Shown: positions 1 to 56,400 of the stretch, piece by piece
Layout: each line of letters opens with the position of its first letter
Numbering within the stretch: the stretch's first letter is position 1
Source of the DNA: Octopus sinensis
Taxonomy: Eukaryota
Direction: 5' to 3'
Assembly (NCBI RefSeq): GCF_006345805.1
Contig: NC_043004.1
Location: 98,890,001-98,954,000 of the forward strand
DNA: 64,000 nucleotides
Translations under genes and position numbers: made by a program
The notes under the pieces: model-generated
The model's input: only the letters and a program-made list of their open reading frames with translations
Database searches by the model: none
Told to the model about the DNA's origin: nothing

Positions 1-1410
1 TTGTTGGTTGCGATGTCGAAGGTATTTCTCTTCTTCGTGATGTGATTGATGAGGGGGAAACAGTTTTTGTATTGTCCGCTGTTTTTCCTATCTTTTGGGT
101 TGAAGGTGGTGTGGGTAGCAGGGGTTTTCTTCCAGGTTTTGGGAGTGGTTGCTGTTGCTGTTGCCTATTTCTGATAGCAGTTGGGCACTCATATCTGAGA
201 TGTGCCTCACCGTTGCACAAATAGCATCGTGCCCTCCTGCCCTCCACCGCTACATACGATTTTTGGTCGTTTGCCAGTTGAACACTTGTTGGTAAATTGT
301 TTATTGCTTCTTGGGAGATTTAAAGCAATATTTTGAGCTTTTTACCAGTCCAGCTTTCCTCTGGAATGTCAGCTATTTCTAAAATATCTGCTTCTATATC
401 AAAGCAGATGGTCGATACCAGCCACTGGGTATCCACTACTGGAGGCACATTGTTTATTGTTACTTTCGTTACTCTGCGCCCAAGATAGCTAGGTGCCATT
501 GTTACCTGGTCTGTGCGCAGAGTAAGCATTGAAAACTTTTTTGTTAGTTCTTCCGTATGGAAGCGAACTTGCACGGTAGCAAATTTACTTCCCCAATTCA
601 CATAATTTCGGAATTTCCACACGGAAGAGAGGCACTTCTCAATCTTTTCTGTAGGTGGGCTTTCTAGTCTTTTTGTTTTGGTGTTGAGTATTCTGTAAAT
701 GATGGTCTTCTTTAGTGTTTCTTCTATGATGTTCCGTGGAATATGTAAATGTATTGTGTTGCCTTCTTTGGTGAGCAAGGATTTTGTGTCTTGTATTTGT
801 TGATGAGTAAATTTTAGGATTCTTCTTTTCGGTCGTATGGCTTCCGCAAAATTCGTCTTGTTTTTTGTGGAGGTGGTGGTGGTGATGTTTGTGGCTGAAT
901 CGTTTGTAGTAGTAGTAGATAACTGTGAAGTCGGTTGTTTACCAGTTTTTGAGTGGAGGTCGCGATGTTAGCGTTCATGCTTGCATTTTGTGCTTGTGAT
1001 GATTTCCCCCATTTCCCCTCCTTCATGAAATTGTGGTGAAAGCAGTATAGGGAAATCAATGTCGTAAGCGTTGCCAAGGAGGGTGTCGGTGTTGATGGTG
1101 GAATCATTGGTTGTCGTGACGAGGATTGGCCTTACGACCTTGGTTTTGTTGTTGTTGTTGGTAGTGGTATCGTTAGCAGAGGAAGCAGTTGTAGTAGCAG
1201 AAGCTGCTGTGGTGGTGGTGTCTGTGTTGATGGTGAAATCATTGGTGGCGGTGACTGTGGATGGCCTGGTTTTGTAGTTGTTGCTTTTGTTGATGCTGAT
1301 GGTGGTGGTGTGGTGGTGGTGGTGGTGGTGGTGGTGGTGTTAGTGGAGTTCAAACTGTCAGGTTCAGCGTTTGGTTGCAGGGAATCTTGCTCTTTTGTTT
1401 CGCCGTCATG
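1..1410 (-). pseudogene. Decayed ORF1 (gag-like, RRM-like region plus CCHC zinc knuckle) of a Tx1/L1-clade non-LTR retrotransposon; runs off the window start
   Basis: One minus-strand frame is open from ~967 to 1 except for a single TAA at 320-322. It reads ...RVTKVTINNVPPVVDTQWL...YVAVEGRRARCYLCNGEAHLRYEC..., with CX2CX4HX4C at 185-226. The upstream Thr/Pro-rich low-complexity part is frameshifted; candidate ATG at 1407-1409. Confidence 0.75.
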
Positions 1411-3629: not shown

Positions 3630-3728
3630 TACCTTTTTCTCTTTATAAATGTCCTGGAAATTTCACACTGCCTTGGTTTTTCTGTCTCATTTAACATACA
3701 CATATGTATATACATACATATATATATG

Positions 3729-4129
3729 TAGGAGTGGCTTGCTTACCAACCACATGGTTCCGGGTTCAGTCCCACTGCATGGCATCTTGAGCAAGTGTCT
3801 TCTACTATAGCCTCGAGCCAACCAAAGCCTTGTGGGTGGATTTGGTTGACGGAAACTGAAAGAAGCCTGTCGTATATATGTATATATATATATATATATA
3901 TGTATGTGTCTGTATATGTTTGTGTGTCTGTGTTTGTTCCCCCAACATCGCTTGAAAACCGATGCTGGTGTGTTTACATCCCCCTAACTTAATGGTTCGG
4001 CAAAAGAGACTGATCGAATAAGTACTAGGCTTACAAAGAATAAGTCCTGGGGTCGATTTGCTCGACTAAAGGTGGTACTCCAGCATGGCCAATGTCAAAT
4101 GACTGAAACAATTAAAAGAGTAAAGAGAG
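3729..4129 (+). mobile_element. SINE family A
   Basis: GGAGTGGCT...GGTTCAGTCCC head, internal (TA)n, AAAGAGTAAAGAG tail. Confidence 0.85.
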
Positions 4130-4557: not shown

Positions 4558-4579
4558 GCGGGAAACGGTTGGGTGGGAG

Positions 4580-4762
4580 ATGGGCTGAATCCTGGAAGCA
4601 TTGCAATATCAGAACAACTTGTGGCAAAGGTGAAGCAAGCCCTTAACACTTCGCCTCGTTCTAAAAATCAGTTTAATATCGATGGCCCCAAATAGGGACC
4701 GTATTAGATATTAAGCTGATAAGAACAGATTCTACACTTTGATCTTAGCCAAAAGGCCGAGA
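4580..4762 (-). pseudogene. U2: U2 snRNA retropseudogene (nt ~7 to 3' end)
   Basis: Minus strand reads TCTCGGCCTTTTGGCTAAGATCAAAGTGTAGAATCTGTTCTTATCAGCTTAATATCT, the conserved U2 5' domain. It continues through an Sm-like site AAACTGATTTTTAGAA and 3' stem-loops (GCTTGCT...ATTGCA...CCAGGA). It has an extra A in GATCAAAG, and the branch-point pairing sequence GTAGTA is changed to GTAGAA. Confidence 0.9.
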
Positions 4763-4906
4763 TAGATAGATAGATATAGATATAGATAGATAAATAGGTA
4801 GATAGATAGATAGATATAGATATAGATATAGATAGATAAATAGATAGATATAGATATAGATAGGTAGAGAAATAGATAGATATAGATAGATAGATATAGA
4901 TAGATA

Positions 4907-11167: not shown

Positions 11168-12040
11168 ATACACACACATTTATACAGACATAAGTACACA
11201 TTTATTGACTGAGTGGGTGATGCTGAAATTAAAATGTTATTACTATTGAGATTGGAAAAGTTTTTTCCTGCTATTTTTTTTTTTTTGTTCTTTCTTTTTC
11301 TTAATATCTCTCTCATATCATATCATATCATATCATATCATTCCATTTGATATTATTTATATATATTTCCCCATCAAATTGATAGACTATCTCTTTAACA
11401 CAACACGTTTCGCATTTCAGGGTCAGACATTTTTTTTATTAATACTATCATCATTATTTATTATTAGTTTTATATATTTTCATATACATAAATATATATC
11501 TATATATTTTATACACACACACATATATATATACATATATGCATTTATATATATGCACATTATTATATGAGCATATATATGTATTTGTCTTCATATATAT
11601 ATATATATAATTATATACATGTATGTATATGTATATATATATATATGTATATATATGTATGTATATGTATATATATATATATATATATACATATATAATA
11701 TATAAGATATATGTATATATATATGTATATAAATGTATGTATGTATGTATATATATATATATATATATATAAAATTTAGCAATTAAGGACAACTACTTAA
11801 TAAGGAAAACTTACAAGAAATTGTCAGGTAGATAGCGTAAAAACCTCATAAGAGAAAAAATTTCGAAAATAATATTCTTATTGAACATATTAATTTATAT
11901 ATAGAGGGCATTATACATACATGCCAGGAGGCATTCTACATACACGCCATACGCTAAGAGGGACAATCAGTCATTTCTACCAAAAATATTACTAATCCTA
12001 CCGAATGCAATTTTTCAAAGAAAGACATTTAAAAATATAT

Positions 12041-12088
12041 AGACCTGTATCACAGTGATTTCATACTTACGTAATCATCAGCAGGCCT
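12041..12088 (-). ncRNA. Type I hammerhead ribozyme (antisense arm copy)
   Basis: Exact reverse complement of 12378-12425. Confidence 0.8.
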
Positions 12089-12377
12089 GAATATACTATA
12101 AATAAACAACGACCCTGCTTCGCTTAAGCCGATCAGCTAACTGATCAACATCAACGAAGCACATGGGTGAATTATAGATACTATATCCGGATGAATGGCA
12201 AACTTTTACGAATTGCATTTCGGGAGAGGAAAAGTTTTTCGGAATAAAAATTTAGCAATTAAGGACAACTACTTAATAAGGAAAACTTAACAAGAAATTG
12301 TCAGGTAGATAGCGTAAAAACCTCATAAGCTGATCGGCTTAAGCGAAGCAGGGTCGTTGTTTATTTATAGTATATTC

Positions 12378-12425
12378 AGGCCTGCTGATGATTACGTAAG
12401 TATGAAATCACTGTGATACAGGTCT
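12378..12425 (+). ncRNA. Type I hammerhead ribozyme, copy 1
   Basis: AGGCCTG-CTGATGA-T TAC GTAA GTA T-GAAA-TCAC T GTGA-TA^CAGGTCT. 7-bp stem I, full core, GNRA-capped stem II, palindromic stem III; predicted cleavage after 12418. Confidence 0.8.
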
Positions 12426-12855
12426 ATATATTTTTAAATGTCTTTCTTTGAAAAATTGCATTCGGTAGGATTAGTAATATTTTTGGTAGAAATGACTGAT
12501 TGTCCCTCTTAGCGTATGGCGTGTATGTAGAATGCCTCCTGGCATGTATGTATAATGCCCTCTATATATAAATTAATATGTTCAATAAGAAATAATTATT
12601 TTCGAAATTTTTTCTCTTATGAGGTTTTTACGCTATCTACCTGACAATTTCTTGTTAAGTTTTCCTTATTAAGATTGTCCTTAATTGCTAAATTTTTATT
12701 CCGAAAAAACTTTTCCTCTCCCGAAATGCAATTCGTAAAAGTTTGCCATTCATCGGATATAGTATATATAAATTCACCCATGTGCTTCGTTGATGTTGAT
12801 CAGTTAGCTGATCGGCTTAAGCGAAGCAGGGTCGTTGTTTATTTATAGTATATTC

Positions 12856-12903
12856 AGGCCTGCTGATGATTACGTAAGTATGAAATCACTGTGATACAGG
12901 TCT
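12856..12903 (+). ncRNA. Type I hammerhead ribozyme, copy 2
   Basis: Identical to copy 1; predicted cleavage after 12896. Confidence 0.8.
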
Positions 12904-13333
12904 ATATATTTTTAATGTCTTTCTTTGAAAAATTGCATTCGGTAGGATTAGTAATATTTTTGGTAGAAATGACTGATTGTCCCTCTTAGCGTATGGCGTG
13001 TTATGTAGAATGCCTCCTGGCATGTATGTATAATGCCCTCTATATATAAATTAATATGTTCAATAGAAATAATTATTTTCGAAATTTTTTCTCTATGAGG
13101 TTTTTACGCTATCTACCTGACAATTTCTTGTTAAGTTTTCCTTATTAAGTAGTTGTCCTTAATTGCTAAATTTTTATTCCGAAAAAACTTTTCCTCTCCC
13201 GAAATGCAATTCGTAAAAGTTTGCCATTCATCCGGATATAGTATATATAAATTCACCCATGTGCTTCGTTGATGTTGATCAGTTAGCTGATCGGCTTAAG
13301 CGAAGCAGGGTCGTGTTTATTTATAGTATATTC

Positions 13334-13381
13334 AGGCCTGCTGATGATTACGTAAGTATGAAATCACTGTGATACAGGTCT
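13334..13381 (+). ncRNA. Type I hammerhead ribozyme, copy 3
   Basis: Identical to copy 1; predicted cleavage after 13374. Confidence 0.8.
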
Positions 13382-13810
13382 ATTATTTTTAAATGTCTTT
13401 CTTTGAAAAATGCATTCGGTAGGATTAGTAATATTTTGTGGTAGAAATGACTGATTGTCCCTCTTAGCGTATGGCGTGTATGTAGAATGCCTCCTGGCAT
13501 GTATGTATAATGCCCTCTATATATAAATTAATATGTTCAATAAGAAATAATTATTTTCGAAATTTTTTCTCTATGAGGTTTTTACGCTATCTACCTGACA
13601 TTTCTTGTTAAGTTTTCCTTATTAAGTAGTTGTCCTTAATTGCTAAATTTTTATTCCGAAAAAACTTTTCTCTCCCGAAATGCAATTCGTAAAAGTTTGC
13701 CATTCATCCGGATATAGTATATATAAATTCACCCATGTGCTTCGTTGATGTTGATCAGTTAGCTGATCGGCTTAAGCGAAGCAGGGTCGTTGTTTATTTA
13801 TAGTATATTC

Positions 13811-13858
13811 AGGCCTGCTGATGATTACGTAAGTATGAAATCACTGTGATACAGGTCT
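13811..13858 (+). ncRNA. Type I hammerhead ribozyme, copy 4
   Basis: Identical to copy 1; predicted cleavage after 13851. Confidence 0.8.
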
Positions 13859-13999
13859 ATATATTTTTAAATGTCTTTCTTTGAAAAATTGCATTCGTAG
13901 GATTAGTAATATTTTTGGTAGAAATGACTGATTGTCCCTCTTAGCGTATGGCGTGTATGTAGAATGCCTCCTGGCATGTATGTATAATGCCCTCTATAT

Positions 14000-14041
<42 letters not shown>

Positions 14042-15175: not shown

Positions 15176-15278
15176 ATGGGTCTTGGAAACACACACAGAT
15201 GTATACATTCACATCAAGTAACACTTGTACACAAACATGCAGCACATCTGATCAGATATATATATATATATATATATA

Positions 15279-15811
15279 TTCCGCCTTGTCCAAAAATTCC
15301 TCTTCCGGACAATTTTTTACTTAAAAAAGGCAGCCCCATACATTTGCTCTCTCATTCATTCATCTAGCACCCGAGCGCAGATAAGTTTGAATGCTTATTT
15401 ATTTTCACTTCTCGATCGATCATGCATGCTTTCTTATCTATCTAACTATTTTTACCTAATTTCTCTATCTATCTAATTATTTTAACTAATTTATCCATTT
15501 CTCCTCTCGAATCAACCATCGTGTATTCGCCATCTTGAAGCCTGTTCCTTTAATACACTTCCGCCTTGTCCAAAAATTCCTCTTCCGGACAATTTTTTAC
15601 TTAAAAAAAGGCAGCCCCATACATTTGCTCTCTCATTCATTCATCTAGCACCCGAGCGCAGATAAGTTTGAACGCTTATTTATTTTCACTTCTCGATCGA
15701 TCATACATGCTTTCTTATCTATCTAACTATTTTTACCTAGTTTCTCTATCTATCTAATTATTTTAACTAATTTATCCATTTCTCCTCTCGAATCAACCAT
15801 CGTGTATTCGC
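15279..15811. repeat. Tandem duplication of a 280-bp non-microsatellite unit (~1.9 copies)
   Basis: TTCCGCCTTGTCCAAAAATTCC starts at 15279 and 15559; only a few substitutions between copies. Confidence 0.95.
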
Positions 15812-21280: not shown

Positions 21281-21678
21281 TTTTACTCTTTTACTCTTTT
21301 ACTTGTTTCAGTCATTTGACTGCAGCCATGCTGGAGCACCGCCTTTAGTCGAGCAAATCGACCCCGGGACTTATTCTTTGTAAGCCCAGTACTTATTCTA
21401 TCGGTCTCTTTTGCCGAACCGCTAAGTAACGGGGACATAAACACACCAGCATCGGTTTCAAGCAATGCTAGGGGGACAAACACAGACACACAAACATACA
21501 CACATATATATATATATACATATATATGACAGGCTTCTTTCAGTTTCTGTCTACTAAATCCACTCACAAGGCTTTGGTCGGCTCGAGGCTATAGCAGAAG
21601 ACACTTGCCCAAGATGCCATGCAGTGGGACTGAACCCAGAACCAGGTGGTTGGTTAGCAAGCTACTTACCACACAGCC
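21281..21678 (-). mobile_element. SINE family A
   Basis: Reverse complement of the 19485 copy. Confidence 0.9.
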
Positions 21679-22310
21679 ACACCATAACATCATTATAAAA
21701 AAAATCACCATCACCACCACCACCACCACCTCAGTATTACTGTATTTATTCCCAACCCACTTCTACCCACCTCATAACTTCATGATTCACCCAGATGCAC
21801 TACCACTATTTCTAGCACTTTCTGTCTCCCGCCATAACACTTTCACCCCTTCTTCAAAAATGTGAGCTACCTTTTAACTTTTCAATACTCAGAGACCGAT
21901 TCTTCTTTGCTTTCTTTCTCTGATACTTTTACTCCTCGTTTCCTAAGTAAAGACATGTCTCTTGTGATTCAAAGTCTTGCAAGTTGAATGGTAGCCACAC
22001 TAGTATTGGTGCCTTGTAAAATGCATCTAATGCCTACTGTGAAGTGGTTGGCATTAGGAAAGACATTCAGCAGAGGAATCCATGCCAAAATTAGACATTG
22101 GAGCATGATGCATCTCTTGGACTAGTCAGATCCTATCTAACTTCCAGCCCATACAAATGTGGAACCTGATCATGAAATGATGATGGTAATGACGATGATG
22201 ACAATGGCGGTGGTGGCGGTGTTGGTGGTGTTGGTGGTGGTGGTGGTGGTGAAAATGATGGTGATGATGATGGTGATGATGATGATGGTGATGATGATGA
22301 TATGATGATG

Positions 22311-40873: not shown

Positions 40874-41062
40874 ATATACATATATATATATACATATATA
40901 TGACAGGCTTCTTTCAGTTTCCGTCTACCAAATCCACTCACAAGGCTTTGGTCGGCCCAAGACTATAGTAGAAGACACTTGCCCAAGGTGCCACACAGTG
41001 GGACTGAACCCGGAACCATGTGGTTGGTAAGCAAACTACTTACCACACAGCCTCTCCTGCAC
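40493..41062 (-). mobile_element. SINE family A with expanded internal (TA)n
   Basis: Both halves are intact, separated by ~200 bp of TA-rich sequence. Confidence 0.85.
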
Positions 41063-43630: not shown

Positions 43631-43681
<51 letters not shown>

Positions 43682-43913
43682 GACAAACTGTGGGTGACAC
43701 AGCTGGGTATCAGGATAGGAACTATGGTTTGACAACCAATGGAGTTGAAGAGGCCCAAGGGAGCTCCACAGCTGGCTTAGAAGTAGTGAATATGAATCCT
43801 AGACTGGATATGGCCTGAAAGTAGTGGATATGAACCAAAGAGTGGTCCCTGTGGAAAAGGCTAATAGCTTAGAAGATAGGAGAATATAAAAAATCATATC
43901 TAGAGTAGGTGAA

Positions 43914-44370
43914 GTGGATGATTGTAATGGAAGTACTAGAAATATTAGTTGTGATTGTGCAAGATACAGGGTCTGTCCACTTGACTGTGATTGTAAACAT
44001 AAAAATATCGTATACAGATGTAAGATTACCTCAGTGAATAGAGAATATTTCTATATAGGAGCTAGCTCATGTTATATTAAGCAGAGAATTGCCAATCATT
44101 TAAGTTCATTTAGAAATAGGGGCAAAATGAATACTACCAGATTTAGTAAACTAATTTGGGCACTTAAAGATAGTAACAAAGTATTTCAATTACTTGAGAA
44201 ATTATTAGTAAAGCAAAACCTTATAGAATAGGCAATAATAGATGTAACTTTTTTGTGGAGAAAATGTACCAAATTTTCTTTTCTAAATATACTATTATCA
44301 ATGCTAGACAGGAATAGGCTTTGACATGTCCACATTGTATTAAACATACATTTAAACAATTTAAAGAAAC
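43914..44370 (+). pseudogene. Penelope-like element GIY-YIG endonuclease C-terminus, decayed
   Basis: CDC...CPLDCDCKHKNIVYRCKI...FYIGAS...KQRIANHLSSF...TRFSKLIWALKD, then a frameshifted GNNRCN...INARQE..LTCPH. Confidence 0.8.
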
Positions 44371-44978
44371 ATAAATTATCAGCTTTAGTACTTATACTAG
44401 TTAATATAATGATTGTGATAATTAATGACCTTTTTTGCGAATAATGCTAAAATAATTTTAGTAACAATAATAATATTAATTGAGGGTATAAACACAAACA
44501 TAAGTGAATTACCTGTGAATGAATAATGTACCCTATACAGTAAAATGTAAACAAGACTACTAAACTTGCTTGTAATATGAATGAACATTTTATAAACCCC
44601 AATTCCACTATAATACCAATATAGGTGATTATAAAGTCAAAATTCAATTTGATTTAAAAAGTGACATAATAACCCTCAACTGAATACCAATGCAGAAAGC
44701 TTATTTGAATTAGTTCACTTTGAAAACATCACAAGTGATGAACCCTTGATAAAATTGCAGTGACTAGGATGCATAACTGCATTCTGAACAATGTGTAGAC
44801 GCTGCAATTGAAAGATATGTTGGTCATTGATATATATATACGCTGTAGAATACTTTTTTTAATAAAATGTTTTGGATGTGAATAAATCTCCACCCTCCTC
44901 TTCATTTTCAATTATATACACGTGCACACATACATATGTGTGGATGCATGTATGTATGTATAAATATATATATATGTT

Positions 44979-45022
<44 letters not shown>

Positions 45023-50657: not shown

Positions 50658-51077
50658 CTCTTTTACTCTTTTACTTGTTTCAGCCATTTGACTGTGGCCA
50701 TGCTGGAGCACGACATTTAGTCGAGCAAATCGACCTCAGGACTTATTCTTTTGTAAGCCCAGTACTTATTCTATCAGTCTCTTTTGCTGAACTGCTAAGT
50801 TACGGGGAAGTAAACACACCAGCATTGGTTGTCAAGTAATGTTAGGAGGACAAACACAGACACACAAACATACACACACGCACACACACACACACAGACA
50901 CACATATATATATATGCATATATACGCTGGGCTTCTTTCAGTTTCCATCTACCAAATCCACTCAGAAGGCTTTGGTCAGCCCAAGGCTATAGTAGGAGAC
51001 AATTACCTAAGGTGCCACACAGTGGAACTGAACCCGGAACCATGTGGTTGGTAAGCAAGCTACTTACCACACAGCCA
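50658..51077 (-). mobile_element. SINE family A
   Basis: Colinear reverse-complement match. Confidence 0.9.
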
Positions 51078-51519
51078 AATATATATATATATATATCTAC
51101 AAAATAAAATTCAAGAATAATGGAAAAATTATGTGATGGATACGCATCTTTTTTTTTAATTGATTATTTATTTTCACACTAGATTCAAATTTAATCATAT
51201 TCTACACACCTGAAAGGCTTTTTAGACGATTTCATTAGAAAAATGTCTATTTTTCTGAAAGTAATGTGGCATATTGCTTAGATAGGACTTGATGTGTTGG
51301 AACGATGATGACTGTGTTCTGTCCTATTAATAAACCAAAATCATCATTGTTTAATTAACATTTATTGTTATAGAAATATTCTAAACTATTTACATTTTTA
51401 CATTGTTGCTTGATAGTAGTGCATAAAGATGTGCTAAATTGAATGTAATTTGTACTTAAATAACTTACTAATAGAAGAAATTATCTTTGTGTGTGAAGCA
51501 GGAATTATATATATAGGAG

Positions 51520-52473: not shown

Positions 52474-52617
52474 TAACATCAAAAAATACCTTAAGAATGA
52501 GAACCCAGGTTCAAAATTTCCCCAAGACCTGATGAAGGCTGGAGGGTATATTAGCCGAAATGCTATGTTAACAAAAAACAAGATGAGGCCAAATATCCGT
52601 CAAATGTAAATAATGTA
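52286..52617 (+). mobile_element. tRNA-headed SINE-like element with (AAT)n, decayed hammerhead motif and an inverted copy of its own 3' end
   Basis: 52286-52363 is the reverse complement of the 3' end (52570-52617 and beyond). A box TTGCGTAGTGG at 52362; B box-like GAGTTTGATTCC at 52405. CTGATGA-A-GGCT...AGCC-GAAA at 52529-52560. Confidence 0.7.
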
Positions 52618-53548: not shown

Positions 53549-53572
<24 letters not shown>

Positions 53573-53580
<8 letters not shown>

Positions 53581-54345
53581 CCAATTAAGGACTGAACACG
53601 AAAAGTGGACAGTCAACATGCTAGATATAGATGTCAAATCGCCATTCTCCACAAAAGATTATGTTCTCAGATCAAACTCAGCACAAAACCAAAGCAATAA
53701 ACAAGTGAAAATATACGAAATAAAATAATTACCCATGTACTGACCCATGTATATATAAATATTTTAATCTCCGGATTCTTTTTTAATATGCTAGACCACT
53801 GGTCTTAATTGATAAATATCAATTTCTACCCTTAATTAATTTTATATAAATAAATATGTTCTCTAACCGATAAATTGACTGCTGCTAATTATTAGCTGCA
53901 GGCTGGTTTTCTCGGGTCTCAACGCGCCAAAGTAAAGGCATTTGAAATATATATTCGAATGTAATAGGCTGAACTCCATGCACGCGATACTTCGGTATCG
54001 TGTTTGCATCTAGTCCAGCAAATTGCATTTATAACGGACCATGCTGATGAAGGCTGCAGTTATCCTTGCGGATAATAATAGCCGAAACTGATCAGTACAT
54101 GGGTAATTATTTTATTTCGTATATTTTCACTTGTTTATTGCTTTGGTTTTGTGCTGAGTTTTGATCTGAGAACATAATCTTTTGTGGAGAATGGCGATTT
54201 GACGTCTATATCTAGCATGTTGACTGTCCACTTTTCGTGTTCAGTCCTTAATTGGTATATATAAATATTTTAATCTTCGGATTCTTTTTTAATATGCTAG
54301 ACCACTGGTCTTAATTGATAAATATCAATTTCTACCCTTAATTAG

Positions 54346-54350
<5 letters not shown>
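53573..54350 (+). mobile_element. Second hammerhead-containing element (506-bp unit, ~1.2 copies) with inverted 5' arm
   Basis: 53573-53743 is the reverse complement of 54092-54262. 53749-53840 is directly repeated from 54255. (TA)n flanks both sides. Confidence 0.88.
54039..54102 (+). ncRNA. Type I hammerhead ribozyme with long stem II
   Basis: CCATG-CTGATGA-A-GGCT gcag TTATCC ttgc GGATAA taat AGCC-GAAA-CTGATCAG-TA^CATGG; predicted cleavage after 54097. Confidence 0.85.
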
Positions 54351-54386
<36 letters not shown>

Positions 54387-55124
54387 CATCCAAGCTAAAT
54401 TGGATGTGCTGTTGATGACAATTCTGACTGTTATGAACACCCTGTGAATCATCTTATTTAGATGACAATTGTTAAAAATCACAGACTATATCAGCTGATG
54501 AAATTGTTGTCTGCATCAATGGATAGCACTACTGCATCATGTTATTTCACCGTAAAATGAAGATCATCAGCAGTAGCTAGCTGAACACCAAATGCCAGAT
54601 CAAAATTAACTGAAATCAATATGGTATTGAGCCATTGAGCTGTGAATAAATTAGCTATTACTGATAGAAGCAGATTTTGACATGAATATTAATTAACACA
54701 TCCAATTTAGGATGGATGTACAAATTAATATTCTCTGCATGCAGCAGAGGTTAGACAAAATCCCAGAAAAGAGAGGTGAACACAGGAATCTTGGTTCCTG
54801 AATGACCTGTGTTTAAAAGAATTATTTCATCTCCAATGCCCTTCTCGAAGCATGTACCATGGACGCAATATCCTCACCTCTCACCAAACAAATAAGTAGC
54901 CAACCAGTCAAAAACAAATTGGCGGCATGAGTAAGATACACAGATGGCAAGACCTTTCAACAGGCATATTTTATTGGTTGCAGTTCTGCTTTGGGTTATA
55001 GGAATCTTAAACTATGATGTACATTGCATTAACCTCACATCTCAAATGAAGATCATCTTTGCTCTTATTAATGTAACTATTTGCTATATTTGCTTCTAGC
55101 ATACCACTACAGTAATCCCTCACC

Positions 55125-55574: not shown

Positions 55575-55990
55575 CTTTTACTCTTTTACTCTTTTACTTG
55601 TTTCAGTCATTTGACTGTGGCCATGCTGGAGCACCACCTTTAGTCGAGCAAATCGACCCCGGGACTTATTCTTTGTAAGCCCAGTACTTATTCTATCGGT
55701 CTCTTTTGCCGAACCGCTAAGTGACGGGGATGTAAATACACCAGCATCAGTTGTCAAGCAATGCTAGGGCGACAAACACAGACACACAAACACACACACA
55801 CATCTATATATATATACATATATACGACAGGCTTCTTTTAGTTTCCGTCTACCAAATCCACTTACAAGGCATTGGTCAGCCCGAGGCTATAGCAGAAGAC
55901 ACTTGCCCAAGATGCCAAGCAGTGGGACTGAACCCGCAACCATGTGGTTGGTTAGCAAGCTACTTATCACACAGCCACTCCTGCACCTAT
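55575..55990 (-). mobile_element. SINE family A
   Basis: Near-complete copy. Confidence 0.9.
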
Positions 55991-56065
55991 GTATTTCCTT
56001 TAAATATATTTTAATTAATGTGTTATACAGTGCAGTACTGTATAACACATTAATTGTTATACAGA

Positions 56066-56400
56066 GAAGGTGCATGGCTCAGTGGTTAGAGCGTCGAGCT
56101 TACGATCGTGAGTTTGTGAGTTCAAATCCCGGACTGGACTGCATGTTGTGTTCTTGAGCAAGACACTTTATTTCATGTTGCTCCAGTTCACTCAGCTGTA
56201 GAAATGAGTTGCAACATCACAGGTTCCAAGCTGTATCAGCCTTTGCTTTTCCCTTGGATAACGCAGGTGTCATGGAGAGGGGAGGCCAGTATGCATGGGT
56301 GACTGCTGGTCTTCCATAAACATCCTTGCCCAACTTGTGCCCAGGAGGGTAACTTTCTAGGTTCAATCCCACGGTCAGTCATGACCAAAGCGGGTCTCAC
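56066..56400 (+). mobile_element. tRNA-derived SINE (family E)
   Basis: ATGGCTCAGTGGTTAGAGCG (A box), GAGTTCAAATCCC (B box), TTCTTGAGCAAGACACTTT core. Confidence 0.75.

What the first reader, a model, noticed from the sequence alone, without database searches (positions are those of the whole stretch)
11771..14007. Tandem array of 478-bp hammerhead-ribozyme units: candidate cephalopod retrozyme / circular-RNA element
Seen: a non-coding 478-bp unit, ~3.5 times in sense and ~1.2 times inverted, inserted in (TA)n. Each complete copy has a full type I hammerhead: stem I AGGCCTG/CAGGTCT (extendable by TATAT/ATATA after a 2-nt bulge), core CTGATGA and GAAA, stem II TAC-GTAA-GTA, palindromic stem III TCAC-T-GTGA and a UA cleavage triplet. 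A long hairpin lies just upstream (GCTTCG 12784-12789 / CGAAGC 12822-12827). Established: tandem type I hammerheads with short palindromic stem III occur in Penelope-like pseudo-LTRs and in animal non-LTR retrozymes (e.g. newt satellite 2, Schistosoma SMalpha, cricket pDo500). Some act as dimers, and retrozyme transcripts are cut into monomers that can circularise. Inference: read-through transcription would be cut after 12418, 12896, 13374 and 13851, giving ~478-nt monomers or circles spread by a PLE reverse transcriptase. The near-identity of the units implies recent amplification. I do not recall such an element being described in octopus but cannot check. Caveat: stem II closes with U-U rather than the usual G-C.
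Basis: partly seen in the sequence, partly recalled or inferred. Interest (0 to 1): 0.93.

Follow-up and report, generated by a model that had tools for sequence, protein, structure and literature searches.

The report
Hammerhead-ribozyme tandem repeat (animal retrozyme)
This is a non-coding ~480-bp repeat in which every copy carries a complete self-cleaving hammerhead motif: a well-formed new example of the known animal "retrozyme" class, whose layout suggests a Penelope-like retrotransposon copied it into a (TA)n microsatellite.

Summary
A 478-bp unit lies 3.5 times head-to-tail at 12328-14007. A 1.18-unit inverted copy lies just upstream at 11771-12327. The whole block splits a (TA)n tract.

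All five copies of the relevant segment hold a type I hammerhead. It has the full core, a 7-bp helix I, a 4-bp palindromic helix III, and a weak helix II with a U.U pair at 10.1/11.1. A descriptor search finds only these five in the window, against about 0.02 expected per 64 kb. No Rfam hammerhead model scores it.

The U.U pair has a published precedent in the axolotl retrozyme motif HHR_Amex2, which cleaves efficiently only in dimeric constructs. Two copies are predicted to fold as a double hammerhead. The unit is 32% GC, non-coding and strongly self-paired.

The layout matches the published insertion signature of Penelope-like elements: partial tandem, inverted 5'-truncated copy upstream, (TA)n target. 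A second, unrelated hammerhead element at 53.6-54.4 kb has the same layout. A decayed GIY-YIG endonuclease remnant at 43.7-45.0 kb is also flanked by (TA)n.

The copies differ almost only by private 1-nt indels, so covariation cannot be tested. Cleavage, RNA circles, copy number and host species remain untested.

Verdict: a real new member of a known kind, of moderate interest.

The parts
11471..11771 (.). Left (TA)n-rich microsatellite, the target tract. The perfect (TA)12 run at 11748-11771 abuts the element.
   Evidence: TRF; perfect tracts
11771..12327 (-). Inverted copy of 1.18 units. In its own orientation it runs from unit position 198 at the junction to about 281 at the left end. Its 3' end faces the left (TA)n.
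   Evidence: BLAST to doubled unit; alignment A1
12041..12088 (-). Hammerhead motif of the inverted copy. Predicted cleavage on the minus strand lies between 12048 and 12047.
12112..12169 (-). Long hairpin of the inverted copy.
12326..12329 (.). Head-to-head junction joining unit position 198 (antisense) to 388 (sense), with a 2-nt AG microhomology. It is not a symmetric palindrome.
12328..14007 (+). Sense tandem array of 3.5 units of about 478 bp, running from unit position 388 to about 158. It crosses the predicted cleavage junction four times with the junction intact.
12378..12425 (+). Hammerhead 1. Helix I is 12378-84 paired with 12419-25. The core CTGATGA is 12385-91. Cleavage is predicted after 12418. 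The distal helix I extension covers 12371-75 and 12426-30.
12775..12832 (+). Long hairpin about 25 nt upstream of the next hammerhead. The folded 61-nt segment 12775-12835 gives -30.5 kcal/mol, z = -5.9.
12856..12903 (+). Hammerhead 2, with cleavage predicted after 12896.
13254..13311 (+). Long hairpin, copy 2.
13334..13381 (+). Hammerhead 3, with cleavage predicted after 13374. A 1-nt deletion disturbs its distal helix I extension.
13730..13787 (+). Long hairpin, copy 3.
13811..13858 (+). Hammerhead 4, with cleavage predicted after 13851.
14006..14037 (.). Right (TA)16 tract. The array ends inside the unit's own TATATATAAATTA stretch.
53568..54363 (+). Context: a second, unrelated hammerhead element. 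It has 1.2 copies of a 506-bp unit (53749-54363) and an inverted partial copy upstream (53568-53743), with (TA)n on both sides. Its PLE-type hammerhead lies at 54039-54102, with cleavage predicted after 54097.
43676..44982 (+). Context: a decayed, 5'-truncated Penelope-like element remnant between two (TA)n tracts. It holds a GIY-YIG endonuclease ORF at 43890-44228.

Best explanation
The block is a non-autonomous, non-coding retroelement of the metazoan non-LTR retrozyme kind.

**Proposed mechanism (inferred)**
1. Transcription across the array gives a multimeric RNA.
2. Each hammerhead is weak on its own. Helix II is 3 bp plus a U.U pair, helix III is short, and in the monomer's minimum-energy fold the core is sequestered.
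3. Neighbouring motifs pair through the palindromic helix III (AUCACUGUGAU) to form a double hammerhead. This cuts after the A of GUGAUA^C and releases monomers of about 480 nt.
4. The monomers fold into a compact, 63%-paired structure. A host RNA ligase could close them into circles.
5. A Penelope-like element's GIY-YIG endonuclease and reverse transcriptase nick a (TA)n tract.
6. Both nicked strands prime cDNA on U/A-rich stretches of a circular or uncleaved multimeric template, as in twin priming.
7. One cDNA gives the 3.5-unit sense array. The other gives the 1.18-unit inverted copy. They are joined at 12327|12328 by a 2-nt microhomology.
8. One such event explains why all copies are practically identical.

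**Shown:** the anatomy, the motif, the predicted folds, the insertion layout and the PLE remnant.
**Inferred:** transcription, cleavage, circularisation and the priming model.
For: - **Array and inverted copy:**
- **Hammerhead motif:** complete core and three helices in all five copies, against 0.023 expected per 64 kb.
- **Dimer fold:** the predicted minimum-energy fold of two copies is the double hammerhead, at -30.7 kcal/mol against 2 x -11.5 for monomers.
- **Unit fold:** -127.7 kcal/mol, z = -6.4. The unit is 63% paired and 32% GC.
- **No coding capacity:** ORFs are 57 aa or shorter, and the one searched (57 aa) has no homologue.
- **Retrozyme literature:** metazoan retrozymes are type I hammerheads in low-GC tandem repeats of 150-450 bp, and their RNAs accumulate as linear and circular monomers. 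HHR_Amex2 has a U.U pair at the base of helix II and cleaves much better as a dimer (PMC7229834). Family consensus lengths span 51-972 bp, and most families have at most 7 repeats (preprint 10.64898/2026.07.22.740005).
- **PLE literature:** PLE insertions are partial tandems with an inverted 5'-truncated copy upstream, and prefer (TA)n (PMC8557442).
- **Same layout elsewhere in the window:** a second element has this layout and a textbook PLE-type hammerhead, with an unpaired A between positions 9 and 10.1, a G10.1-C11.1 pair and a palindromic loop 3 (features per PMC4209133).
- **(TA)n association:** perfect (TA)n tracts cover 2.2% of the window, yet 6 of 6 boundaries of the three elements abut one.
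- **PLE remnant:** the GIY-YIG ORF has 1606 relatives. The one long relative with any Pfam signal, P0146, carries an RT-like region followed by a C-terminal endonuclease.
- **Template state:** the array crosses the cleavage junction intact four times, so the template was a circle or an uncleaved multimer.
Against: - No Rfam hammerhead model scores the motif, even on 91 nt at E <= 10. The PLE-type motif of the second element is missed as well, so these models seem insensitive to such short variants.
- The hammerhead fold is not the minimum-energy fold of a single copy, and its stability is unremarkable (z = -0.4).
- Helix II lacks the usually conserved G10.1-C11.1 pair.
- No covariation is available. 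The copies are identical in the motif, and no relative of the unit was found anywhere reachable.
- The unit shares no sequence with the PLE remnant in the window.
- That PLE family shows no hammerhead core in the related contigs.
- Indel-only differences and the inversion cannot be separated from assembly error without reads.
Confidence: 0.72

Rival explanations
1. It is an internally deleted Penelope-like element, or a solo pseudo-LTR array, and not an independent retrozyme family. On this view the hammerhead-bearing terminal repeat of a PLE was left after loss of the ORF, and the tandem and inverted layout is just the usual PLE insertion structure.
For: The layout and the (TA)n target are those of PLE insertions (PMC8557442). 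Retrozymes are reported to be sister to PLE pseudo-LTRs (preprint), so the boundary between the two is thin.
Against: - There are 3.5 + 1.18 copies of a short unit with no ORF remnant.
- The hammerhead is of the canonical type, with a 4-position helix II and a 7-bp helix I. It is not the PLE minimal type, which has a long helix II, an unpaired nucleotide after A9 and a short helix I (PMC4209133).
- It shows no similarity to the PLE remnant in the window.
Confidence: 0.15
2. It is an ordinary satellite or minisatellite that grew by unequal exchange within a TA-rich region, and the hammerhead-like motif is a chance match with no catalytic role.
For: Rfam does not recognise the motif. Helix II is weak with a U.U pair. 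The single motif is not the minimum-energy fold. There is no covariation evidence.
Against: - The chance expectation is about 0.02 per 64 kb and about 2e-4 per unit.
- Core, palindromic helix III, helix sizes and the U.U variant all match described animal retrozyme hammerheads.
- The inverted copy with a microhomology junction, and the identical layout of a second hammerhead element, are not what unequal exchange produces.
Confidence: 0.08
3. The tandem copy number or the inverted segment is an assembly artefact of a single or dimeric unit, such as a chimeric or mis-collapsed long-read consensus.
For: Differences between copies are about 20 private 1-nt indels and one substitution, which is typical of long-read consensus error. 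PLE-type insertions are known to cause assembly problems (PMC8557442).
Against: - The inversion junction is asymmetric, joining unit position 198 to 388. That is unlike a missed-adapter palindrome.
- The same inverted-plus-tandem layout recurs in an unrelated element 40 kb away, and it is the expected biological structure.
- Even a single or dimeric unit would still be a hammerhead-bearing element.
Confidence: 0.05

Closest known systems
Metazoan non-LTR retrozymes (Cervera & de la Pena 2020, PMC7229834), for example the 350-390 bp repeats of the mussel Mytilus galloprovincialis
   Same: Type I hammerhead in every unit of a short, AT-rich, non-coding tandem repeat. The monomer RNA is predicted to be highly self-paired. 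It co-occurs with Penelope-like elements. The mussel hammerheads also lack most of the conserved nucleotides of the usual loop 1-loop 2 contacts.
   Different: The unit of about 480 bp is above the 150-450 bp first described, though inside the 51-972 bp later reported. Helix III has 4 bp, which is longer than the usual 1-2 bp. There is no sequence similarity to check against. Expression and circles are untested here.
Axolotl retrozyme Rtz_353 with the HHR_Amex2 motif (PMC7229834)
   Same: A U.U mismatch at the base of helix II, a weak helix II, and a likely weak loop-loop contact. HHR_Amex2 cleaves 22% as a monomer and much better in dimeric constructs, which is what the dimer fold predicts here.
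   Different: A different host lineage and unit length (350 bp against about 480 bp). Helix III here is a 4-bp imperfect palindrome, not 2 bp plus a tetraloop.
Newt satellite 2, Schistosoma SM-alpha and cave-cricket pDo500 hammerhead repeats
   Same: The classical tandem repeats with type I hammerheads, transcribed and self-cut into monomers. The newt motif works as a double hammerhead.
   Different: These are high-copy satellite or SINE-like families with G10.1-C11.1. The genomic copy number here is unknown.
Penelope-like element pseudo-LTR hammerheads (Cervera & de la Pena 2014, PMC4209133) and PLE insertion architecture (Craig et al. 2021, PMC8557442)
   Same: Partial tandem, an inverted 5'-truncated copy upstream and a (TA)n target. 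The helix III is palindromic, which implies dimeric action.
   Different: There is no RT/EN ORF. [quoted passage not shown] The second element at 54 kb does have those features.

Membership tests
Metazoan non-LTR retrozyme | Type I hammerhead with a complete catalytic core in all tandem repeats | tested here: met
   The identical 48-nt motif with CUGAUGA, GAAA, A15.1-U16.1, A17 and three helices is present in all 4 sense copies and in the inverted copy.
Metazoan non-LTR retrozyme | Head-to-tail repeats of a few hundred bp (150-450 bp originally; 51-972 bp across families) | tested here: met
   Period 478 bp, 3.5 copies.
Metazoan non-LTR retrozyme | Low GC content (below 45-50%) | tested here: met
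   The unit is 32% GC, against 37% for the window.
Metazoan non-LTR retrozyme | No protein-coding capacity and no LTR organisation | tested here: met
   The longest ORF inside the array is 57 aa, and this ORF, the only one searched, has no homologue among 5.8 billion proteins. The structure is a simple tandem with no terminal repeats flanking an internal region. Primer-binding-site and polypurine-tract motifs were not searched for specifically.
Metazoan non-LTR retrozyme | Monomer RNA predicted to be stable and highly self-paired | tested here: met
   -127.7 kcal/mol, z = -6.4. The circular fold gives -121 kcal/mol with 63% of bases paired.
Metazoan non-LTR retrozyme | Self-cleavage of the transcript at the hammerhead site | not testable with these tools
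   Only folding predictions are available. The double-hammerhead fold is the predicted minimum for two copies.
Metazoan non-LTR retrozyme | Accumulation as linear and circular monomeric RNA | not testable with these tools
   No transcriptome data are reachable.
Metazoan non-LTR retrozyme | Dispersed genomic copies, as evidence of mobility | not testable with these tools
   There is no other copy in the window. No animal genome collection is on hand. Pattern scans of metagenome and viral contigs gave only chance hits.
Metazoan non-LTR retrozyme | Co-occurrence with Penelope-like elements in the genome | tested here: met
   The GIY-YIG ORF at 43890-44228 (Pfam E = 1.9e-4, 22.1 bits against a 22.6-bit cut-off) has 1606 relatives. 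One long relative, P0146, shows a weak RT region plus a C-terminal endonuclease; P0145 and P0055 gave no RVT_1 hit. The evidence is a decayed remnant, not an intact PLE.
Hammerhead ribozyme (Rfam Hammerhead_1 and related models) | Conserved core: C3-A9, G12-A14, A15.1-U16.1, and H17 not G | tested here: met
   CUGAUGA ... GAAA ... U-A^C, read directly from the sequence.
Hammerhead ribozyme (Rfam Hammerhead_1 and related models) | G10.1-C11.1 pair closing helix II | tested here: not met
   The pair is U.U. A natural precedent with measured activity exists in HHR_Amex2.
Hammerhead ribozyme (Rfam Hammerhead_1 and related models) | Score at or above the family's gathering threshold | tested here: not met
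   There is no hammerhead hit at the gathering threshold, and none at E <= 10 on 2.4 kb or on 91 nt. The PLE-type motif at 54 kb is also missed.
Hammerhead ribozyme (Rfam Hammerhead_1 and related models) | Covariation supporting helices I-III | not testable with these tools
   All five copies are identical in the motif, and no relatives were found.
Penelope-like element insertion | Partial tandem with an inverted 5'-truncated copy adjacent upstream | tested here: met
   The inverted 1.18 units lie directly upstream of the sense array, with 3' ends facing outward. The description is in PMC8557442.
Penelope-like element insertion | Insertion into a microsatellite, (TA)n preferred | tested here: met
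   Both ends abut perfect (TA)n. Such tracts cover only 2.2% of the window.
Penelope-like element insertion | ORF encoding an RT and a GIY-YIG endonuclease | tested here: not met
   There is no ORF of this kind in the array. It can therefore only be a non-autonomous passenger.

The most novel reading that the evidence does not exclude
The locus is a frozen record of one retrotransposition event. In this reading, a circular (or uncleaved multimeric) retrozyme RNA was copied by rolling-circle, twin-primed reverse transcription at a (TA)n tract nicked by a Penelope-like GIY-YIG endonuclease. That would be direct structural evidence, from an invertebrate, of which machinery moves animal retrozymes and how tandem arrays arise in a single step. 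The practically identical copies would also mean the family is active now, so the animal's tissues should hold abundant hammerhead-derived circular RNAs of about 480 nt.
Probability: 0.35. Interest if true: 0.6.

Novelty: new member of a known kind. Interest (0 to 1): 0.42.

Why it matters
Animal retrozymes are a recently recognised route to abundant circular RNAs. Which retrotransposon moves them was left open in 2020 and has since been argued mainly from vertebrate phylogeny.

This locus adds a clean example.

It also shows the Penelope-type insertion signature on a retrozyme: a (TA)n target, a twin-primed inverted copy, and microhomology junctions. That makes the mobilisation model testable genome-wide.

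The hammerhead itself is a natural U.U 10.1/11.1 variant with a 4-bp palindromic helix III. That makes it useful for studying regulation of cleavage by dimer formation.

Tried and rejected
1. **Rfam.** I searched the whole window at the gathering threshold, then 2.4 kb, then 91 nt at E <= 10. There was no hammerhead hit, only noise from miRNA and sRNA models on TA-rich sequence.
2. **Exact and gapped DNA pattern scans of metagenome and viral contigs.** The exact stretch from the core through helix II to GAAA gave nothing. The gapped pattern gave three hits, L001-L003. On inspection these lack helices I and II and are chance matches.
3. **A protein search to recover other genomic copies.** I looked for a spurious 57-aa ORF of the unit among predicted proteins of public assemblies. 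There was no hit.
4. **Similarity between the retrozyme units and the 3' region of the Penelope-like remnant.** Only TA-rich noise came up.
5. **A hammerhead core in three related contigs of that remnant, L004-L006.** None was found.
6. **An snRNA-type promoter.** I compared the unit with the upstream region of the window's U2 gene. That upstream region is a (TATC)n microsatellite, so the comparison says nothing.
7. **Shared blocks between the two hammerhead elements.** TATATAAATWAATATGTTC and GTCCTTAATTG lie near the element ends, but they are short, AT-rich and not collinear. I do not count them as homology.
8. **Identifying the host through the sequencing-run accessions of the related contigs.** They are not mentioned in the paper library.
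9. **tRNA-like parts.** None were found.
10. **The word-index protein search with the GIY-YIG ORF.** It found nothing. The exhaustive HMMER search did find relatives.
Full report
**1. What is there**

Tandem Repeats Finder reports one array at 12328-14012 with a period of 478 bp, 3.5 copies and 98% matches. I aligned the region to a doubled unit, numbering the unit from the C that follows the predicted cleavage site, so that 12419 is position 1. This gives the following layout:
- The sense array starts at unit position 388 (window 12328) and ends at about position 158 (window 14007-14012).
- An antisense copy covers 11767-12329. In its own orientation it runs from unit position 198, at the junction, through a full turn to position 281 at the far left.

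The block abuts perfect (TA)n runs on both sides, at 11748-11771 and 14006-14037.

**2. How the copies differ**

Among the sense copies BLAST finds no mismatches, only gaps. The inverted copy has one mismatch. In the multiple alignment the variable columns reduce to about 20 single-base indels and one real substitution. Nearly all of them are private to one copy.

This is the error profile of a long-read consensus, so the real copies may be identical. Two things follow. The window carries no covariation information. And near-identity should not be read as a measured young age with any precision.

**3. The hammerhead**

The 48-nt string AGGCCUG-CUGAUGA-UUAC-GUAA-GUAU-GAAA-UCA-CUG-UGA-UA^C-AGGUCU occurs identically four times on the + strand and once on the - strand. 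Its parts are:
- **Core:** all conserved positions are present (C3-A9, G12-A14, A15.1-U16.1, A17).
- **Helix I:** 7 bp including one G.U pair. It can be extended by 5 A-U pairs after a 2-nt bulge.
- **Helix II:** U-A, A-U and C-G closed by a GUAA loop, with a U.U pair at 10.1/11.1.
- **Helix III:** 4 bp with a 3-nt loop. Read differently, it is the imperfect palindrome AUCACUGUGAU.

A descriptor search over both strands of the window finds only these five sites. In 300 second-order Markov simulations of the window, the mean was 0.023 hits. I wrote the descriptor after seeing the motif, so it is not a blind test. Even so, a chance origin inside a 478-bp unit is very unlikely.

Against this, no Rfam hammerhead model reports the motif. 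That holds at the gathering threshold, at E <= 10 on 2.4 kb, and at E <= 10 on 91 nt. The same is true for the second hammerhead in the window, which matches the published description of Penelope-type motifs point by point. I therefore read the Rfam result as low sensitivity to these short variants, not as evidence of absence. It remains a failed membership criterion and is listed as such.

**4. Folding**

- A single motif does not fold as a hammerhead in the minimum-energy prediction. UGAU of the core pairs with AUCA of helix III, and stability is ordinary (z = -0.4).
- The hand-drawn hammerhead fold costs -9.5 kcal/mol, against -11.5 for the minimum.
- Two copies together are predicted to fold exactly as a double hammerhead. 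Both helix II hairpins form, and the extended intermolecular helix III has 5 + 5 bp around a U.U pair. The energy is -30.7 kcal/mol, against 2 x -11.5 for two monomers.
- The whole unit folds at -127.7 kcal/mol (z = -6.4). The opposite strand gives -97.1 kcal/mol (z = -5.3).
- As a circle the unit gives -121 kcal/mol with 63% of bases paired.
The 61-nt segment 12775-12835 that holds it folds at -30.5 kcal/mol, z = -5.9.

This is the pattern described for dimer-dependent hammerheads. They are silent in the monomer or circle and active in the multimer.

**5. Comparison with the literature**

- **Cervera & de la Pena 2020 (PMC7229834)** define metazoan non-LTR retrozymes as follows. They have type I hammerheads in low-GC tandem repeats of 150-450 bp. 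They lack LTRs, primer-binding sites and polypurine tracts. [quoted passage not shown] Examples come from a coral, a mussel and the axolotl.
[quoted passage not shown] That motif cleaves 22% as a monomer and much more efficiently in dimeric constructs.
- **A 2026 preprint (10.64898/2026.07.22.740005)** reports family consensus lengths of 51-972 bp and a maximum of seven repeats in 75% of families. It counts a retrozyme as active when all its repeats carry the hammerhead.
- By these criteria the present array qualifies on every feature that can be read from sequence. It is 32% GC. Its ORFs are 57 aa or shorter, and the 57-aa ORF that I searched has no homologue.

**6. The insertion layout points to a Penelope-like element (PLE)**

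Craig et al. 2021 (PMC8557442) describe PLE insertions as partial tandems. [quoted passage not shown] The block has exactly this layout.

The details fit a twin-priming type of target-primed reverse transcription:
- Both outer ends are 3' ends of their copies.
- Both outer ends lie in U/A-rich stretches of the unit that could anneal to a nicked (TA)n. These are ...CUAUAUAUAAAUUA on the right and ...GCUAAAUUUU on the left.
- The inner junction joins the two 5' ends, unit positions 198 and 388, with an AG microhomology.
- The junction is asymmetric. That argues against a simple palindromic assembly artefact.

The sense array crosses the predicted cleavage junction four times with the junction intact. 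The template was therefore either a religated circle or an uncleaved multimer. One such event would yield identical copies at once. The priming model is an inference from anatomy and published models, not a demonstrated mechanism.

**7. Supporting context in the same window**

- **A second, unrelated element at 53568-54363.** It has 1.2 copies of a 506-bp unit and an inverted partial copy directly upstream, with (TA)n on both sides. Its hammerhead lies at 54039-54102. The motif has a 5-bp helix I, an unpaired A between positions 9 and 10.1, a G10.1-C11.1 pair, a long helix II, and a 2-bp helix III with the palindromic loop UGAUCA. These are the features listed for PLE hammerheads in PMC4209133. 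The 76-nt stretch 54030-54105 that contains this motif folds at -24.8 kcal/mol, z = -3.8.
- **A GIY-YIG endonuclease remnant.** An ORF at 43890-44228 matches the Pfam GIY-YIG domain at E = 1.9e-4 and 22.1 bits, just under the 22.6-bit cut-off. The element it belongs to, about 43676-44982, is again bounded by (TA)n. An exhaustive HMMER search finds 1606 relatives. Of the three long relatives scanned at a lenient threshold, only P0146 shows an RT-like region followed by a C-terminal endonuclease: RVT_1 E = 0.019 and GIY-YIG E = 0.0023. P0145 and P0055 gave no RVT_1 hit. Related contigs L005 and L006 also match the RT-EN linker in the right order. L004-L006 are 76-80% identical to the window over parts of 43700-44918, with L005 covering 43926-44918.
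- **The (TA)n association.** Perfect (TA)n tracts of 6 or more repeats cover 2.2% of the window. Yet all six boundaries of these three elements abut one.

**8. What could not be done**

No animal genome or transcriptome collection is on hand. The following therefore remain untested:
- the genomic copy number and the flanks of other copies;
- covariation in the helices;
- transcription, cleavage and circularisation;
- the host species.

The window is consistent with an AT-rich animal genome. It has a U2 snRNA match, transposon remnants and many microsatellites. Paper searches found no work that describes hammerhead repeats in octopus or other cephalopods. The only cephalopod mention among the hammerhead papers concerns Naiad PLE remnants. 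This is absence from a partial library, not proof of novelty.

**9. Verdict**

It is a new member of a known kind, the metazoan non-LTR retrozyme, and not a new kind of element.

What goes slightly beyond the known is the clear Penelope-type insertion signature on a retrozyme, seen twice in one window. This bears on the open question of how these elements move.

I score interest at 0.42. My confidence in the retrozyme reading is 0.72. The main rivals are a PLE deletion derivative (0.15), a chance motif in an ordinary satellite (0.08) and an assembly artefact (0.05).

Noticed in passing
window 53568-54363 (hammerhead at 54039-54102, + strand): A second, unrelated hammerhead element. It has 1.2 copies of a 506-bp unit and an inverted partial copy upstream, with (TA)n on both flanks. 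The hammerhead is of the Penelope-like type: an unpaired A after A9, a G10.1-C11.1 pair, a long helix II and the palindromic loop 3 UGAUCA. The inner junction carries a 9-nt duplication, ACCCATGTA.
   Followed up: partly
window 43676-44982 (+), ORF 43890-44228: A decayed, 5'-truncated Penelope-like element remnant with a GIY-YIG endonuclease ORF, bounded by (TA)n on both sides. It has 1606 relatives in the protein library. Related contigs L004-L006 are 76-80% identical. No hammerhead core was seen in its 3' region.
   Followed up: partly
window 52529-52575 (+): A degenerate look-alike of the 54-kb hammerhead (CTGATGA-A-GGCTGG...TAGCC-GAAA) without convincing helices I or III. It is probably an old decayed copy.
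   Followed up: no
window 54515-54575 (- strand): A hammerhead-like string with a perfect 6-bp helix I (CUACUG/CAGUAG) and the core CUGAUGA...GAAA. However, it has G at position 17 and almost no helix II. It is likely a chance match or a dead copy.
   Followed up: no
window 4575-4769 (- strand): A full-length U2 snRNA match (148.5 bits). Its upstream 200 bp is a (TATC)n microsatellite with no recognisable promoter region, so it may be a pseudogene or a retro-copy.
   Followed up: partly
window 15279-15811: A 281-bp unit repeated 1.9 times at 98% identity, starting directly after a (TA)11 tract (15257-15278). It has no hammerhead core. It could be another partial-tandem insertion of the Penelope type.
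   Followed up: no
window, e.g. 3690-3983, 21530-21862, 40901-41050, 50814-51104, 55768-56154: A dispersed repeat appears many times on both strands. It is recognisable by the pseudo-peptide SFSFRLPNPLTRLWSARGYSRRHLPKMP. It is probably a SINE-like family, often next to TA/CA microsatellites.
   Followed up: no
window 2-319 (- strand): An ORF fragment with a weak zinc-knuckle match (zf-CCHC_3, E = 0.006). It may be a gag remnant of another retroelement running off the window start.
   Followed up: no
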